Sequence record: MN563784.1 | Length of the DNA stretch: 64,000 nucleotides | Strand: one strand, 5' to 3' | Shown here: piece by piece, positions 1,233 to 63,360 of the stretch | Layout: each line of letters starts with the position of its first letter | How positions within the stretch are numbered: position 1 is the first letter of the stretch | The notes under the pieces: model-generated | Told to the model about the DNA's origin: nothing | The model's input: the letters and a program-made list of their open reading frames with translations, nothing else | Database searches by the model: none | Program-made: the position numbers and the translations under genes

Positions 1233-4200
1233 TGGCTTCTGCATTTGAAGATTATGTAAACGGGGAACTCCCCAAACGGGTATCATCAATTGATGAACCC
1301 ACTTCTGTAGTTAATGGACACATCCCGGTTTCTACCGGGGTGGGTCTTAATACCACTTTCGTTGATCCTGTTACTATACCTGGATTAAAGGGTGAAGATG
1401 GTCAGCCGGGTAAAGATGGCGATCAAGGTCCCCCTGGCCCAGTTGGTCCGGCTATTAACATTATCGCTAATGTTGATCTAGCAACATTCGAACAAGATAT
1501 TAAACCATTAGATACGCATAATGTCGGTGATGCTTGGTTCGTTGAAGATCGGCTATGGGTATGGGAATCACCGCTAGGTAATGAAGATCCCCCTGTAAAA
1601 GGTCGTTGGGTTGAAACAGGTTCACTTCGTGGTCCAGATGGTACTGGTCTGGTTATCCGTGGTCGTTGGCCTAATAACTTAGAATTACCTAAGACTGAAA
1701 GTAATAAACCTGGAGATGCTTACTCATGGAATAATCAACTCTGGGCGTGGATGCTTATCTCAGGTAATAATCCGCCAGAGAATCCAACTATTGATGACTA
1801 TGATTGGTTCCCAGTTACACCACAGGGTGAACGTGGACCTGAGGGCCCTGAAGGTCCGCAAGGTAAAGATGGTGAAATTGGTCCTGAAGGTCCTCAGGGT
1901 GAACCAGCAATGCCGTTTACCATTAAGGATTCACTACCATCACCAGCTGATTTACCTGATCCATCTGTAGCTAAAGAATCAGAAGCATACTTAGTTACTA
2001 TGGAAGCTGGTAAACCAGAACATCTATTCATCTTTGTAAAAGGGGCATGGTCAGACCTAGGTACTTTCCAAGGCCCTGAGGGCCCACAAGGTAAACCAGG
2101 TAATACAGGTGATCCGGGTCCCGATGGTAAACAAGGTGAACCTGGTCCACAAGGTCGTAACTTAGAAGTAGTTAAAGCAGTTGAAACTGCTGATGATCTA
2201 TTAACCACCACTGGTGTAGAACAATACCAAGGTGTTTCAGTACGTTCCACCAATACGGTTTATGTACTGACTGGCCAAGATCCGACTGTTGATATCTCAT
2301 GGACAGCCATGGGTTCATTCCGTGGCCCGCAGGGCCCTGAAGGTCCGCAAGGTGAAGATGGCGAACAAGGTCTACCTGGTGAACCAGGGGCACAAGGTAA
2401 ATCGGCTTTCCAAGTAGCATTGGACAATGGCTTCACTGGTACTGAGGGTGAATGGTTAATCAGTCTACATGGTAAGAACGTAGTTATTACTGGTGCTGTT
2501 GCCAATGAGGCAGCCCTGCCGGCAGATGCTCCTGATCAGGCAGCGTACTTCACACAAGACACATCTACCTTATTTGTTAAGATAGATGGTAATTGGGTAA
2601 ATAGTGGTACACATCGAGGTCCTAAAGGTGAAGATGGCGCACCTGGTAAAGACGGTGATCAGGGACCAGAAGGACCCGAGGGACCAGAAGGCCCACAAGG
2701 TCCCGCTGGTGAACCTATCCAGATCATCGCAGCGATTGACACTCCTGAAGATACCCCACCAGAAGCACTTGCCGATAACCAATGGAAAGCATATACTGTT
2801 AAGTCCACGGGCGAAGTATTTGTTAACATGGACGGTAGTCGCTGGACTAGCATTGGTATTATGGCAGGTCCGCAAGGTAAACCGGGTGAAGGTTTAAACA
2901 TTAAAGGTGTTTTAACCGATGCTTCACAACTACCAAAGAAAGACACTGATCCTGACTTAGTAACTGGTGATTCATACTGGGTTGAAACTAACGAAGGTAC
3001 AATGCTCTATACTTACCAAGGTCAGGAAATTGATGGCTATATCGGCCCAATTAATCTAAATGGTGAGCAGGGTATCCAGGGTGTCGAAGGCCCACAAGGT
3101 CCTGAAGGTAAACAAGGTGGTGGTCTATTAATTATCTATGTTGGTGATGATGCTGGTAAACCAGTAGCATCTGCTGATAACGTAGGTAAAGGTATTGCCA
3201 TTCGCACCAATACTGAAGGACAAGTAGAAGTATTTGTAAGTATCGATACTGAAGGTACATTTACTTGGGAAAGCCTAGGTGTCTTAGCCATGGGTCCGCA
3301 GGGTCCTGAAGGCCCTGAGGGCAAACAAGGTGTTCCAGGTATCCCTGGTAAAACCGGTCAGAAAGGTGAACGTGGATCCTCTTGGGTAATTCTACCTGAA
3401 GGTCAAACTGCACCCACTTCTATCGATGGTAATCGTGGTGACTGGTGTATCGACAAAACTGGTACCGTTTGGTATAAAGATGCTAACTGGGTTGTATTCT
3501 ACAAATTAATGTCAGTTCCAGTTAGTGAAGTCGATCCAGAAGATGTCGATAAGAAAATGGTTCGGTACAAACTCGGTTGGACTGAACTACCTGTTGATGA
3601 GGTGGTAGATGCTGAAGTAGGTGTCTTCTATGGTCGCCGTAAAGCAACCGCTGACGGGGCTGTTGAATGGACTGCTATTGAATTACCAACACCTGCCATT
3701 GATGCTGTACCTAGTCCAGTTGTTAATGCACAATACGTTCGTAAAGGTATTGCAGGGGGTGAAACTGAATGGGCTACCATTACATTCCCAGAAATTCCTT
3801 CAGATGTAGTACGCGATACTGCACAAGCTACTAAGCCTCAAGGTCGTGTAGCTGGTAACTGGGTTGATGTAGCACCTCTGCAAACCGATGATACTCTAAT
3901 GGGTATGCAAAATGGTGAATGGGTAGCTGTACCAGCCGCAGTTATTGGTGAAGTACCTAGTGAAGGTGCTAATGGCACTAACTATGTACGTGAGAAAACA
4001 GCTAGTGGTTCTAAATGGACACCTGTAACTATTATAGTTGATCAAGCTGATGCTACTAGTGGACAACTATTCCTACGTAATGCTGCGGCTAAATCATGGA
4101 CTCTATTCCAAGGGCCGAATAATGATGTAACCGCTGATGGTGATTGGCTACGTAGCCGTACTGGTACTAATATTACTTGGAAGAAGCTAGATAAATCATT

Positions 4201-60898: not shown

Positions 60899-63010
60899 TT
60901 AAAACCGCATATATGCGGGCTGATATGGTTTATACATACGTGTATCAAAGTCATTAAAATCAATTGCGATATCATACTTCTCAAATGATTCTTTTAGCAT
61001 CTGATAAATGATTTTATTTTCATCAAAATTATTATTTTTATCAACATAACTTTCTAATGACTCTGTGATCTCAAATGGAGATTTAATACCCATAATAGCT
61101 TCAACCATTGCCTGACTCCATTTTAGAATGTCATCTGACCTTGTTGAGATATTCGGTTCATCTTCTGTATCGAGAGTACATTGATATACGACTGTTTGTG
61201 AATCCTGACCTTTACGGTAAATTCGAGCAATAGCTTGTTCTAGAATGTAATGCCTAAACGGTGAATTAATTGTCACCATAGTATCAGCCATCGTCATACG
61301 GACCGCTGTTGAAAGGGAAGCATATGTAGCTACCAATGGATTTAATTTAGGGTCTTTCTCAAATCTACTGATTATTTGAGGTAAATTGTCATTGGTTTTA
61401 CCATACACCACCGCCGGATGCATACCTAATTTATTGGTGTACTTATCAACAGTATCAACAACCTCAACAAACGATGTAAATGCAATCGTTTTCTTCATAG
61501 TTGATTCAGTGATACCAACCCAGTCAATATACGGTACCATGTCCACATGGCACTGAATGCGTTTAGCACCTAAAACCCTTCCCAAACATTCACCTTGTAT
61601 CTTTAGCATAACGTATTTTATAACTGATTTAATATCTCTAAAAGCAGCTATTTCATTACGAGGTAAAGTTGGCTCTATAAACATTTTTTCATATTGGTTA
61701 GATTCTTTAATTTCTTCACCAATGTATCGCGGGTCTTGATTCTTCTGAATTATTTTAATCAAATTCTTATAGCGAGCGAAACCATCTTTCTGCGCCTGGG
61801 TCTTAAGAGAGTTCTCATGTATCGCCATTAGTTTAGCCCAATACTTCTCATCTTCTGGTCGGCGCGCAGCATAGAACTTTACACGTTCTCTAATAAAAGC
61901 TTCACAATCACGTTTAATGGCATTAAGAGTATACTGTGATCCATTTGGTATCTTGATACGATACGCTTTTATCCTCGGTGGTAAAACCTCAGTATCTTTC
62001 TTTTCAATGACGTACGCAATTAACCCAAAGCGATGTTGGACAATATCTAATCCTTTCTGTGTCTCTTTTCCAAATGCTTTCTTAAAACGTTCTTCAACCT
62101 CATTGGTGAAGAGATCGTCTAATACTCTTAATGCACTTACTAATTCAGAACCAAGTGCTTTAACAGGGGTACCTGACGCTAATAATCTGTTATTAGAGTT
62201 AGACATAAAACATATTTGCTGGAACTTAAGAGATTGTGCAGAATTAGGATCGTTCATATTGTGTGATTCATCCAGAATCACCGTAATGTTCTTACCTTTG
62301 AATATACCGCTTCTTAATAGATCAATTATTTTATCTTGCGCCTGGTAATGGGATATAAGTATTCTTTGACCGTTGTAGGCTTTATCATCAATGGTCGACC
62401 ATACTTTTTGTCTTTCCTTATACATCTCAATAATAGATGGCTTCCATATTAGATCAATAGACTTCTTTTCACAAACAACTATAATGATATCCGACTCAAC
62501 CATTTCAGCAATAGCCATCGTCATGAATGTCTTACCAGTACCAGGTTTACCTGCAACAATATCACCACGTAAACCATACTGGTCAATTCGATAATTATAA
62601 TTTTCAAAATAAGCTTTTTGAGACTCATCTGGTGTAAATGTCAATTTGTCTAACATCTTGAAATTGAGTCTACCTGGTACAGAGTTGGTATCTACAGGAC
62701 GAGTATTTTTTAACCAGGTATATTGAAGCATTGCTTCACGGATGGCATTAACAGTTTTAATAGAGATGTATCTACTTCTATAATTCTTTACTGCTTCTAG
62801 CATGTAATATATTTCAGGAGCAAAGAATTTATAAAATGAAATACTACGACGACTAACCGTGTTAAATAACTGCGTAGCTAATTTAGTGGTTCGCCAATAC
62901 TTGTTAATATCTCTAATGAATGCAGCACCATCAAAACCACTGATGATAATTTCTTGATCAGTTTCAGTAATTGATAGCGAGCCCATTAGCTTCCTAAATG
63001 AGTCTATCAT
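60899..63010 (-). CDS. SF2 (SNF2-like) helicase (gp203-like)
   Basis: GKPGTGKT, LDESH, ASGTP, QAIARIYRKGQ motifs; 703 aa. Confidence 0.88.
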   Translation of the reverse strand: MIDSFRKLMGSLSITETDQEIIISGFDGAAFIRDINKYWRTTKLATQLFNTVSRRSISFYKFFAPEIYYMLEAVKNYRSRYISIKTVNAIREAMLQYTWLKNTRPVDTNSVPGRLNFKMLDKLTFTPDESQKAYFENYNYRIDQYGLRGDIVAGKPGTGKTFMTMAIAEMVESDIIIVVCEKKSIDLIWKPSIIEMYKERQKVWSTIDDKAYNGQRILISHYQAQDKIIDLLRSGIFKGKNITVILDESHNMNDPNSAQSLKFQQICFMSNSNNRLLASGTPVKALGSELVSALRVLDDLFTNEVEERFKKAFGKETQKGLDIVQHRFGLIAYVIEKKDTEVLPPRIKAYRIKIPNGSQYTLNAIKRDCEAFIRERVKFYAARRPEDEKYWAKLMAIHENSLKTQAQKDGFARYKNLIKIIQKNQDPRYIGEEIKESNQYEKMFIEPTLPRNEIAAFRDIKSVIKYVMLKIQGECLGRVLGAKRIQCHVDMVPYIDWVGITESTMKKTIAFTSFVEVVDTVDKYTNKLGMHPAVVYGKTNDNLPQIISRFEKDPKLNPLVATYASLSTAVRMTMADTMVTINSPFRHYILEQAIARIYRKGQDSQTVVYQCTLDTEDEPNISTRSDDILKWSQAMVEAIMGIKSPFEITESLESYVDKNNNFDENKIIYQMLKESFEKYDIAIDFNDFDTRMYKPYQPAYMRF

Positions 63011-63075
63011 TGCATTTTTCCTTAAGGGGTATGTAAATATAACTCTAAGTCATAAGATTAGCTAACGAATAAAAA

Positions 63076-63280
63076 TACGCACAGTGCAATGATATAGAGC
63101 AAGGCAGTTTGCGTAAAACGCACTGTACTTTAAGGGGGTGATCCAGTCGTAAATAAACCGGGGTACTAAAGTATCGTCAGGAACGACACGAACCCCAACT
63201 ACGGTGCCTTGCTACTCACCGACCTCTAGATAGGGGTCGGACCTATTACATTAAAGGAGCCCACCAGGGGCTCCTTTATG
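63076..63280 (+). ncRNA. Candidate structured, pseudoknotted ncRNA
   Basis: ORF-free island, 98/200 G+C by hand count over 63081-63280. At least six helices. G-U pairs favour the + strand. Ends in a terminator. Confidence 0.55.
63252..63278. terminator. Terminator hairpin
   Basis: TAAAGGAGCCC-ACCAG-GGGCTCCTTTA perfect 11-bp stem. Confidence 0.8.
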
Positions 63281-63306
63281 CCATTCATTATAAATTAATT
63301 TAAATC

Positions 63307-63314
63307 TATATTAC
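63307..63314 (+). promoter_or_regulatory. Early (vRNAP) promoter
   Basis: TATATTAC 46 nt upstream of the 63361 ORF. Confidence 0.65.
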
Positions 63315-63360
63315 AGGATTACCATAAAGATATTTATCCTTTTATAATGAGGAAAAGATT

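What the first reader, a model, noticed from the sequence alone, without database searches (positions are those of the whole stretch)
63076..63280. GC-rich pseudoknotted ncRNA candidate with HDV-ribozyme-like helix order
Seen in sequence: an ORF-free island of 49% G+C (hand count) within very AT-rich flanks. Helices: A, ACAGTGC 63081-87 / GCACTGT 63120-26; B, AGCAAGGCA 63098-106 / TGCCTTGCT 63205-13; C, GTT 63107-09 / AAC 63117-19 closing a 7-nt loop. A nested arm follows: GGGGT/ACCCC, GTCGT/ACGAC and GGTAC-TAAA-GTATC. Then a 10-bp hairpin (63219-63240) and an 11-bp terminator. A and B cross, giving a pseudoknot. The order (7-bp P1, linker, P2, 3-bp P3, 7-nt L3, P1', long P4, P2') is that of HDV-like ribozymes. 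However, the loop (UGCGUAA), the two nt after P1' (AC, not GG) and the pre-P2' joiner do not match the HDV catalytic consensus, so I do not call it a ribozyme. Two G-U pairs favour the + strand. Inference: a stand-alone small RNA transcribed divergently from the helicase gene.
Basis: partly seen in the sequence, partly recalled or inferred. Interest (0 to 1): 0.75.

Follow-up and report, generated by a model that had tools for sequence, protein, structure and literature searches.

The report
Phage small RNA matching ribosomal RNA tail
The flagged region is a real, conserved small non-coding RNA gene of phiKZ-like Pseudomonas jumbo phages; it is not an HDV-like pseudoknot, and its most conserved stretch is a 17-21-base complement of the 3' end of the host 16S ribosomal RNA, which suggests it binds host ribosomes.

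Summary
The window is a phiKZ-type phage. The finding lies between the SNF2 helicase gene (PHIKZ203) and PHIKZ204.

**Observation.** It holds: a G+C-rich, ORF-free island with the stated helices.

**Family.** I found 22 distinct homologues in Pseudomonas jumbo phages and metagenomes. No Rfam family matches.

**Structure.**
A further hairpin and a phiKZ-type terminator follow.
- In 201phi2-1 a published transcript 3' end maps onto this terminator.
- Helix A, which made the pseudoknot and the HDV-like order, is not supported. It overlaps the covarying P2, shows no covariation, and probably lies upstream of the transcription start.

**New finding.**
- The single-stranded joiner between P2 and P3 holds an invariant AGGRGGUGAUCCA block.
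- Seventeen consecutive positions pair with 16S rRNA nucleotides 1525-1541 in 21-22 of 22 members. All three variable sites keep pairing.
- No start codon or conserved ORF follows.
- The family model also hits the antisense strand of 16S gene 3' ends.

**Best reading (inferred).** A trans-acting RNA that pairs with the anti-Shine-Dalgarno tail of the host 30S subunit. What follows from that pairing is unknown.

The parts
63070..63079 (+). Promoter-like motif: an A-rich run followed by TAC(G). In most relatives it reads A-rich + TACT.
   Evidence: Present at a fixed distance (14-16 nt before TATAG) in all homologues. It fits the phiKZ 'middle' motif described by Wicke et al.: TACT centred 22 nt upstream of the TSS, preceded by an A-rich repeat. 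The assignment is inferred; no TSS data were available.
63093..63097 (+). Invariant TATAG. The predicted transcription start lies at about 63096-63100.
   Evidence: Invariant in 22/22 sequences. The start position is inferred from the motif-to-TSS distance reported.
63098..63106 (+).
   Evidence: P1 columns are 90% paired and 5 of 10 pairs show changes on both sides.
63107..63126 (+). P2 hairpin. The core is UGCG 63110-13 with CGCA 63119-22; outer pairs run up to G63107-C63123.
   Evidence: 96.6% of cells paired, with CG/UA exchange at one pair. The register in phiKZ-type rows is shifted by one. T63126 in this window is C in phiKZ.
63131..63151 (+). Single-stranded joiner carrying the complement of the 16S rRNA 3' end. 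The conserved core is 63132-63148 (16S 1541-1525). In this phage 21 nt are contiguous.
   Evidence: Position-by-position table. Predicted duplexes of 18-21 bp, -33 to -40 kcal/mol. Host 16S sequence confirmed. Unpaired in the covariation-supported structure.
63160..63196 (+). P3 domain. It closes with GGGGU 63160-64 / ACCCC 63192-96 and encloses P4 (GUC 63176-78 / GAC 63185-87).
   Evidence: P4 is 96% paired, all 5 pairs have compensatory changes, and 18/22 members have a GNRA tetraloop. A 4-7 bp P3 can be drawn in every member, but the alignment is uncertain: 61% paired.
63197..63204 (+). Conserved joiner AACUACGG between P3 and P1.
   Evidence: Nearly invariant ACG/CUACG. The family model aligns it to the antisense of 16S CCGUAG, the h45 5' strand.
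63205..63213 (+). P1, 3' strand. It contains the invariant CCUUG.
63219..63240 (+). Hairpin between the core and the terminator.
   Evidence: Read and folded. A hairpin sits at this place in all homologues, but it differs in sequence.
63253..63282 (+). Intrinsic terminator of the phiKZ type: stem 63253-63277, then UUUAUGCC.
   Evidence: Stem pairs covary across the family. The tail motif TTTATGYYGT matches the published phiKZ terminator motif. The homologous terminator of 201phi2-1 coincides with the published TTS at 229,201, which was validated in vivo.

Best explanation
The region encodes a stand-alone RNA of about 185 nt, roughly 63098 to 63282 on the + strand. It is made from a phage-type promoter and ended by a phiKZ-type terminator.

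It folds into a three-way junction. P1 closes the fold, P2 is a short hairpin, and P3 carries a GNRA-capped P4. The junction leaves about 30 nt between P2 and P3 single-stranded.

That joiner holds a sequence complementary to the last 17-21 nt of Pseudomonas 16S rRNA: the anti-Shine-Dalgarno tail plus the first bases of the 3' strand of helix 45.

The proposed mechanism is that the RNA acts in trans. It pairs with the free 3' tail of 16S rRNA on host 30S subunits, or on 16S precursors, as a very strong Shine-Dalgarno-like ligand that is followed by no gene.

- Shown: the gene, the family, the fold, the terminator and the complementarity.
- Inferred: the physical pairing with 16S rRNA, the promoter and start site, and the time of expression.
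- Open: the consequence of pairing. It could block or sequester initiation-competent 30S, tether the RNA to ribosomes, protect the tail from nucleases, or interfere with 30S maturation.
For: 1. Family and conservation. There are 22 distinct homologues in phiKZ, SL2, PA1C, HPP-Temi, PhiPA3, 201phi2-1, Viktualia, Phabio, D6, Psa21 and 11 IMG/VR or metagenome contigs. They score 75-113 bits against the family model.

2. Structure.
- 87.5% of cells are paired, against 29-44% when the partners are slid.
- 16 of 23 pairs show changes on both sides.
- The covariation score is 0.439 against 0.186 in shuffles (0/500).

3. Strand.
- The terminator tail motif lies on the + strand in all members, and the 201phi2-1 TTS lies 3' of the stem on that strand.
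- GNRA loops read correctly on the + strand.
- The supported pairs contain 26 G.U against 6 A.C cells.

4. Complementarity.
- Columns opposite 16S 1525-1541 pair in 21-22 of 22 members.
- The three polymorphic sites alternate only between letters that both pair: A/G opposite U1541 and U1537, C/U opposite G1526.
- Pairing falls off beyond 1524, and the conserved stretch ends one base short of the mature 3' end: 1542 pairs in only 13 of 22 members.
- Predicted duplexes are -33 to -40 kcal/mol, or -25 kcal/mol with the 14-nt tail alone.
- The 16S sequence used occurs exactly in over 100 genome stretches, nearly all titled Pseudomonas or close relatives.

5. It is not a ribosome-binding site for a gene. 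Most members have no start codon 3-14 nt downstream, and there is no conserved ORF.

6. The family model hits the antisense strand of 16S gene 3' ends at 26.8 bits (E = 3.5e-6 in that locus). Both conserved single-stranded blocks align.

7. The 64-kb window holds no alternative target: the only match to the block's complement with fewer than 2 mismatches is the block itself.
Against: - There is no direct evidence of expression in phiKZ or of binding to ribosomes. The main texts of the published phiKZ ncRNA surveys do not mention this locus, and their tables could not be read.
- phiKZ genes themselves use Shine-Dalgarno sequences, so a simple sponge would also hurt the phage.
- Ribosomes are very abundant, so a stoichiometric decoy would need high expression.
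- In thermodynamic folds the block is only about half accessible: mean unpaired probability 0.28-0.59.
- Its first five bases can also pair with the P1 3' strand in all members.
- All hosts share one 16S tail, so co-variation between RNA and target cannot be tested.
- The match could be inherited from a captured rDNA fragment rather than selected for pairing.
- No relative was found next to the helicase gene of eight more distant jumbo phages.
Confidence: 0.55

Rival explanations
1. It is a genuine structured phage ncRNA, but the conserved block serves another partner. That partner could be a phage or host protein, another RNA, or a tertiary contact. The likeness to the antisense of the 16S 3' end would then be ancestry (a captured, inverted rDNA fragment) or coincidence.
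For: - Two collinear blocks, not one, resemble the antisense of 16S (AGGRGGUGAUCCAGYC and CUACG..CCUUG), as expected of descent from an rDNA fragment.
- Phages do capture rrn fragments: Aeromonas phage AP1 carries a 16S 3'-end stretch followed by tRNA-Ile and tRNA-Ala.
- The second block is partly locked in P1, and its 16S counterpart is buried in the mature subunit (established knowledge of 30S structure).
Against: - A relic would decay. Instead, 17 consecutive positions stay pair-compatible across genera whose helicases are only 51-58% identical.
- The conserved complement stops within a base or two of the mature 3' end.
- The chance that an invariant 13-mer equals the complement of some 13-mer of 16S is about 2e-5 (my arithmetic: 1,540 / 4^13).
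Confidence: 0.25
2. The - strand is the functional one. It would produce a mimic of the 16S 3' end (helix 45 plus the anti-Shine-Dalgarno tail) that titrates Shine-Dalgarno sequences or factors binding the 16S tail.
For: - The - strand reads CAAGG..CCGUAG..[insert]..CUGGAUCACCYCCUUA, collinear with 16S 1501-1542.
- The - strand also folds better than its shuffles, z = -3.35.
Against: - The terminators, with their directional TTTATGYYGT tail, and the mapped 201phi2-1 TTS are on the + strand.
- The promoter-like motif is on the + strand.
- GNRA loops and 26 G.U pairs fit only the + strand.
- Half of the family would carry CCCCC instead of CCUCC. That breaks a mimic but is neutral (G.U) for the + strand complement.
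Confidence: 0.05
3. It is a cis-acting leader. Either the block is the ribosome-binding site of a small ORF, or the RNA is an attenuator or riboswitch for the gene downstream.
For: - The block contains a perfect Shine-Dalgarno core.
- In PhiPA3 the element lies directly upstream of, and in the same direction as, the helicase gene.
- Many phiKZ ncRNA candidates are 5'-UTR products ended by premature termination.
Against: - Most members have no start codon at a usable distance, and the ORFs of 6-29 codons differ in start and frame.
- The downstream gene differs between phages. It is convergent in PA1C.
- In phiKZ, Phabio, D6, Psa21 and others the downstream gene has its own TATATTAC early promoter after the terminator.
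- The homologous terminator was chosen in 201phi2-1 for over 99% termination efficiency.
Confidence: 0.05
4. It is a pseudoknotted, HDV-like self-cleaving ribozyme, or another pseudoknotted RNA built on helices A and B.
For: In this genome helices A (7 bp) and B (9 bp) exist and cross, in the order P1-P2-P3-P1'-P4-P2'.
Against: - Helix A has no comparative support, overlaps the covarying P2, and its 5' strand is probably upstream of the start.
- No HDV-type Rfam model matches at E up to 10 in three family members.
Confidence: 0.02
5. It is a DNA-level element (origin, packaging or recombination site, or a promoter/terminator cluster) and not an RNA with a function of its own.
For: - It sits in a divergent intergenic region next to a DNA helicase gene in all relatives.
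- Its orientation relative to the neighbours varies.
Against: - Compensatory changes that keep G.U pairs, together with GNRA tetraloops, point to selection on a folded RNA strand.
- It is bounded by a promoter-like motif and a validated terminator.
Confidence: 0.03

Closest known systems
Shine-Dalgarno elements of mRNAs, especially extended ones (for example the strong SD of Flavobacterium rpsU)
   Same: A purine-rich stretch complementary to the 3' tail of 16S rRNA. The core GGAGG/GGGGG pairs with CCUCC.
   Different: The complement here is 17-21 nt, against the usual 4-9. It reaches into helix 45 and is invariant across a family. No start codon or conserved ORF follows. It sits in the joiner of a covarying three-way junction in a terminated small RNA.
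Synthetic oligonucleotides complementary to the 16S 3' end that inhibit bacterial translation (Jayaraman et al. 1981, recalled from memory, not checked here)
   Same: Same target stretch of 16S rRNA, and the same idea of blocking the mRNA-binding tail.
   Different: Those are short artificial oligomers. This would be a natural, phage-encoded, structured RNA, and its effect on translation is untested.
Phage-encoded ncRNA candidates of phiKZ and 201phi2-1 (Grad-seq and ONT-cappable-seq; PMC8545117, PMC10914365, PMC11512511)
   Same: A short transcript of a jumbo phage, bounded by a phage promoter and a phiKZ-type terminator, and conserved among related genera.
   Different: The candidates named in those texts lie elsewhere: the PHIKZ298 3'UTR, the p40 5'UTR, upstream of PHIKZ221, PHIKZ302 and gp182. 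None is reported to match rRNA. This locus may be in their supplementary tables, which were not readable here.
HDV-like self-cleaving ribozymes
   Same: Only the order of the helices as drawn in this one genome.
   Different: The defining nested double pseudoknot is not conserved, no covariance model matches, and the catalytic consensus is absent.
3' minor domain of 16S rRNA (helix 45 and tail), read antisense
   Same: Two collinear blocks align to the antisense of 16S 1501-1542. The family model scores 26.8 bits on real 16S gene ends.
   Different: About 46 model positions (the P3-P4 domain) replace the tip of helix 45. P1 and P2 have no counterpart. The element is transcribed in the opposite sense to rRNA.

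Membership tests
HDV-like ribozyme | A nested double pseudoknot in which P1 and P2 cross and are conserved. | tested here: not met
   P2' = helix B covaries. P1 = helix A does not exceed the shuffles and clashes with the covarying P2 hairpin.
HDV-like ribozyme | A match to a curated covariance model of the family. | tested here: not met
   No HDV-type hit at E up to 10 in the window, D6 or PA1C copies, and none at the gathering threshold.
HDV-like ribozyme | Self-cleavage at the 5' end of P1. | not testable with these tools
   This needs an in vitro transcription and cleavage assay.
Shine-Dalgarno ribosome-binding site of a gene | Complementarity to the anti-SD tail of 16S rRNA. | tested here: met
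   Seventeen conserved pairing positions; duplex of -25 kcal/mol with the tail alone.
Shine-Dalgarno ribosome-binding site of a gene | A start codon about 4-12 nt downstream, opening a conserved ORF. | tested here: not met
   No start in 14 of 22 members. Where one exists it is 11-14 nt away and differs. The longest ORFs are 6-29 codons with different starts.
Trans-acting base-pairing small RNA | An independent transcription unit with its own promoter and terminator. | tested here: inconclusive
   The terminator is conserved, covarying, and mapped and validated in 201phi2-1. The promoter is inferred from a motif only. No TSS data were available.
Trans-acting base-pairing small RNA | A conserved, accessible seed complementary to a defined target. 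| tested here: met
   The block is unpaired in the covariation-supported structure. Its complementarity to 16S 1525-1541 is kept in 21-22/22 members. The thermodynamic accessibility is only moderate.
Trans-acting base-pairing small RNA | Physical interaction with the target in cells. | not testable with these tools
   This needs gradient fractionation, crosslinking/ligation or 30S binding assays.
Any Rfam family | A score at or above the family gathering threshold. | tested here: not met
   Zero matches in the whole window. Only sub-threshold chance-level hits appear in targeted scans.

The most novel reading that the evidence does not exclude
Pseudomonas jumbo phages make a dedicated anti-ribosomal RNA: a structured small RNA that clamps the anti-Shine-Dalgarno tail of host 16S rRNA, and possibly invades helix 45 through its second complementary block. 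It would thereby reprogram, shield or shut down the host's 30S subunits or their maturation during the middle phase of infection. I know of no described natural trans-acting RNA that targets the mRNA-binding tail of the ribosome.
Probability: 0.4. Interest if true: 0.9.

Novelty: new variant of a known kind. Interest (0 to 1): 0.78.

Why it matters
phiKZ is the model nucleus-forming jumbo phage, and how it takes over host translation is an open question. So far only proteins have been found to touch the ribosome (PMC10914614).

A conserved phage RNA carrying a 17-21 nt complement of the anti-Shine-Dalgarno tail gives a concrete, directly testable candidate for RNA-based control of host ribosomes.

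If it binds 30S, it would be a natural counterpart of the synthetic anti-16S oligonucleotides. It would also be a new mode of host takeover, or of protection of the ribosome from tail-cleaving toxins.

Even if that function fails, the family is a well-supported new structured RNA, absent from Rfam, with a defined fold and clear borders.

Tried and rejected
- **Rfam.** Gathering threshold on the whole window, and E up to 10 on the region and on two homologues: nothing.
- **tRNA/tmRNA scan.** Nothing.
- **Loose DNA patterns in IMG/VR.** GGTGATCCA..GTGCCTTG, and the variant with GGCAG, gave mostly chance hits in coding DNA. L120-L122 were inspected and discarded.
- **The stricter pattern in metagenomes.** It returned many reverse-strand 16S gene ends and an unrelated repeated element, besides 8 true homologues. 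These were filtered out by hand and with the family model.
- **Family model on the helicase neighbourhoods of eight more distant jumbo phages.** RTH11, RP12, Goslar, Rebecca, Moabite, Yong XC32, OBP and EL gave no hit. Only 4-10 kb on each side was searched, so absence from those genomes is not shown.
- **Supplementary tables.** Those of the phiKZ and 201phi2-1 transcriptome papers are not held, and the Grad-seq supplements do not mention the locus. Ceyssens et al. 2014 is not held.
- **Literature searches.** Searches for a phage RNA targeting the anti-SD found none. One broad search was uninformative.
- **Raw wobble count.** Over all model pairs it gave no strand bias: 26 G.U against 31 A.C. 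Only after removing four terminal or misregistered columns does the bias appear. I report it as weak support.
- **Rsm/CsrA sponge idea.** I rejected it by eye, reading: GGA motifs in loops are not conserved. phiKZ has GGGGG in the block, and many P4 loops are GAGA, GCGA or GUGA.

Full report
**Where we are.**
- The window is a phiKZ-type Pseudomonas aeruginosa jumbo phage. It is 100% identical to vB_PA32_GUMS over the 551 bases compared, at the same coordinates, and 99.8% to phiKZ (window 62900 = phiKZ 212657).
- The finding lies in the 350-bp gap between the start of the SNF2 helicase gene PHIKZ203 (- strand, start codon at 63010) and PHIKZ204 (+ strand, 63361).
- No record annotates anything there.

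**The observation.**
- The island has 0.41-0.50 G+C, against 0.25-0.37 around it.
- It has no ORF of 30 codons or more.
- Its + strand folds far better than its shuffles: -74.6 kcal/mol, z = -4.66, 0/200.

**Relatives.**
- blastn found partial matches in other Pseudomonas jumbo phages: PA1C, PS119XW, HPP-Temi, PhiPA3, Phabio, 201phi2-1, Viktualia and D6. A pattern match added Psa21.
- A pattern built on the conserved blocks found more copies in IMG/VR and metagenome contigs, most of them about 300 kb long.
- After removing chance hits there are 22 distinct sequences. A covariance model built from them scores all of them at 75-113 bits and finds one copy in the window.
- The element always lies beside the SNF2 helicase gene, but its orientation relative to its neighbours changes. 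It is divergent from the helicase in phiKZ, co-directional and upstream in PhiPA3, and flanked by two opposite-strand genes in PA1C.
- It therefore behaves as a self-contained unit.
- No copy was found within 4-10 kb of the helicase gene in eight more distant jumbo phages.

**Strand and borders.**
- Every copy ends in a G+C-rich stem followed by TTTATG(Y)(Y)GT on the + strand. This is the terminator motif published for phiKZ. The stem pairs covary.
- In 201phi2-1, ONT-cappable-seq mapped a transcript 3' end at 229,201. That terminator was among those chosen for over 99% efficiency and outperformed lambda T0 in vivo.
- That coordinate is position 3151 of locus L124, seven bases 3' of this element's terminator stem on the + strand.
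- Upstream, all copies have an A-rich run followed by TAC(T), 14-16 nt before an invariant TATAG.
- Wicke et al. describe the phiKZ middle-type promoter as a TACT motif preceded by an A-rich repeat and centred 22 nt upstream of the start.
- This puts the start at about 63096-63100 and the 3' end at about 63282, an RNA of about 185 nt. The promoter, the start and the 'middle' timing are inferences.
- An early-type TATATTAC promoter for PHIKZ204 follows the terminator at 63308-63315. The RNA is therefore not the leader of that gene.

**Structure.**
- On the model-guided alignment, a four-helix structure has 87.5% of cells paired, against 29-44% when the 3' partners are slid.
- 16 of 23 pairs show changes on both sides, and the covariation score is 0.439 against 0.186 ± 0.014 in shuffles (0/500).
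- P2 is a short hairpin right after it (63107-63126).
- P4 is a 5-bp hairpin in which every pair shows compensatory change. It is capped by a GNRA tetraloop in 18 of 22 members; phiKZ types have AGGA in a wider loop.
- P3 closes the central domain. A 4-7 bp helix can be drawn in each member, but the register differs and the columns are only 61% paired.
- In phiKZ, P3 is GGGGU 63160-64 with ACCCC 63192-96. That is homologous to GGUAC/GUACC in 201phi2-1 and GAUAC/GUAUC in PA1C.
- The alignment was fitted to the model, which favours the structure. The slid controls and the plain MAFFT/RNAalifold result point the same way for P2, P4 and the terminator.

- Helix A (63081-87 with 63120-26) uses nucleotides 63120-63123, which belong to the covarying P2.
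- On the alignment, its five testable pairs plus helix C are 71% paired. Column shuffles reach that in 31/500 trials and reach the covariation score in 55/500.
- Its 5' strand lies between the promoter-like motif and the predicted start.
- In phiKZ itself, position 63126 is C, not T. That breaks the last pair of helix A and makes the outer P2 pair G-C instead of G.U.
- I therefore read helix A as a local coincidence. With it go the A-B pseudoknot and the HDV-like order.
- No HDV-type or other Rfam model matches.

**The main feature.**
- The longest invariant stretch of the family is AGGRGGUGAUCCA, in the joiner between P2 and P3.
- It is the complement of the 3' end of 16S rRNA.
- The Pseudomonas sequence GUCGUAACAAGGUAGCCGUAGGGGAACCUGCGGCUGGAUCACCUCCUUA was confirmed as an exact match in over 100 genome stretches, nearly all titled Pseudomonas or close relatives.
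- Column by column, the RNA pairs with 16S nucleotides 1525-1541 (E. coli numbering, from memory) in 21-22 of 22 members.
- The only three variable sites in this stretch alternate between letters that both pair: A or G opposite U1541 and U1537, and C or U opposite G1526.
- Pairing drops to chance beyond 1524, and 1542, the last base of mature 16S, pairs in only 13 of 22 members, so the conserved stretch ends one base short of the mature end.
- In this window the complement is 21 nt long (63131-63151).
- Predicted duplex energies are -33 to -40 kcal/mol, with Phabio at -28.7, and -25 kcal/mol with the 14-nt free tail alone. Ordinary Shine-Dalgarno pairings are far weaker (established knowledge).
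- Most members have no start codon at a usable distance, and no ORF is conserved. The block is therefore not the ribosome-binding site of a gene.
- The 64-kb window contains no other sequence the block could target.

**A second likeness.**
- The family model also hits the reverse strand of genuine 16S gene ends in metagenome contigs at 26.8 bits (E = 3.5e-6 in that locus).
- In that alignment the block is aligned, and so are the conserved joiner CUACGG and the invariant CCUUG of the P1 3' strand. They align to the antisense of 16S CCGUAG and CAAGG. The P3-P4 domain stands where the tip of helix 45 would be.
- This may mean the element descends from an inverted rDNA fragment.
- Phages do pick up such fragments. 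Aeromonas phage AP1 carries a 16S-end stretch followed by tRNA-Ile and tRNA-Ala, the layout of a bacterial rrn spacer.
- Alternatively, the RNA may be able to pair with both strands of helix 45 in unfolded or precursor 16S rRNA. I cannot tell which.

**Mechanism.**
- I commit to a trans-acting RNA that pairs with the anti-Shine-Dalgarno tail of the host small subunit.
- The fold, the family, the terminator and the complementarity are shown. The pairing itself is inferred.
- What it achieves is open. Options are blocking initiation on a fraction of 30S subunits, tethering the RNA to ribosomes, shielding the tail from nucleases that cut the anti-SD region (such toxins exist in other bacteria; titles), or disturbing late 30S maturation.
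- Points against are listed in the structured fields. Chief among them: phiKZ mRNAs also use Shine-Dalgarno sequences, ribosomes are abundant, and there is no expression or binding data.
- An alternative fold, in which the first five bases of the block pair with CCUUG in place of the P1 5' strand, is possible in all members. It could mask the block.

**What is known.**
- The main texts of the phiKZ dRNA-seq, Grad-seq and ONT-cappable-seq papers, the 201phi2-1 paper, the ChmC paper and a 2026 review name other ncRNA candidates. None lies at this locus, and none matches rRNA.
- The locus may be among the unnamed candidates in supplementary tables that I could not read.
- Searches for a phage RNA aimed at the anti-SD found nothing.

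**Verdict.**
- The pseudoknot and HDV-like reading is not supported.
- The element is better described as a new, conserved, three-way-junction small RNA that displays a long complement of the 16S rRNA 3' end.

Noticed in passing
L423 2265-2527 (Aeromonas phage AP1, MT713136.1 233818-234080): A 27-nt stretch 92.6% identical to the 16S rRNA 3' end. On the same strand it is followed by tRNA-Ile and tRNA-Ala, the layout of a bacterial rrn spacer. It looks like a captured host rRNA-operon fragment in a T4-like jumbo phage.
   Followed up: partly
Metagenome loci L228, L231, L233, L235, L236, L242, L245, L247, L264, L272 and others (JAAUYG01 contigs): A multi-copy element with inverted arms GGATCACCTCCT ... 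AGGAGGTGATCC, followed by a conserved CAACTTCTCCTACA..GCAGTCAACCAGTCAAAAC stretch. It is unrelated to the phage RNA and was picked up only because it contains the same 12-mer.
   Followed up: no
window 60899-63010 (-) and its homologues in L001, L002, L214: The SNF2 helicase (PHIKZ203) matches in two pieces in PhiPA3, PA1C, PS119XW and SL2. PA1C annotates two CDS, and the SL2 and PhiPA3 genes are about 0.8-1 kb longer. This suggests an inserted element (intron or intein) in those phages.
   Followed up: no
window 63308-63315: The early-promoter motif TATATTAC lies directly after the RNA's terminator and ahead of PHIKZ204. The same arrangement is seen in Phabio, D6, Psa21, L129 and L241.
   Followed up: partly
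   Followed up: yes
window 63011-63022 (helicase 5' UTR region) and L001 about 2941-2952: CCTTAAGGGGTA lies next to the helicase start codon, so the helicase mRNA would carry CCCCUUAAGG. Eight bases of that are complementary to UUAAGGGG at the 5' end of the RNA's block. It is seen in phiKZ and PA1C but not in D6, and is probably just the helicase ribosome-binding site.
   Followed up: no
LUZ19-like Pseudomonas phages, scaffolding protein gene (for example NC_010326.1 23906-23926): A 21-nt match (20/21) to the antisense of 16S 1516-1536 inside a coding region, conserved across the genus. E = 3, so it is likely chance.
   Followed up: no
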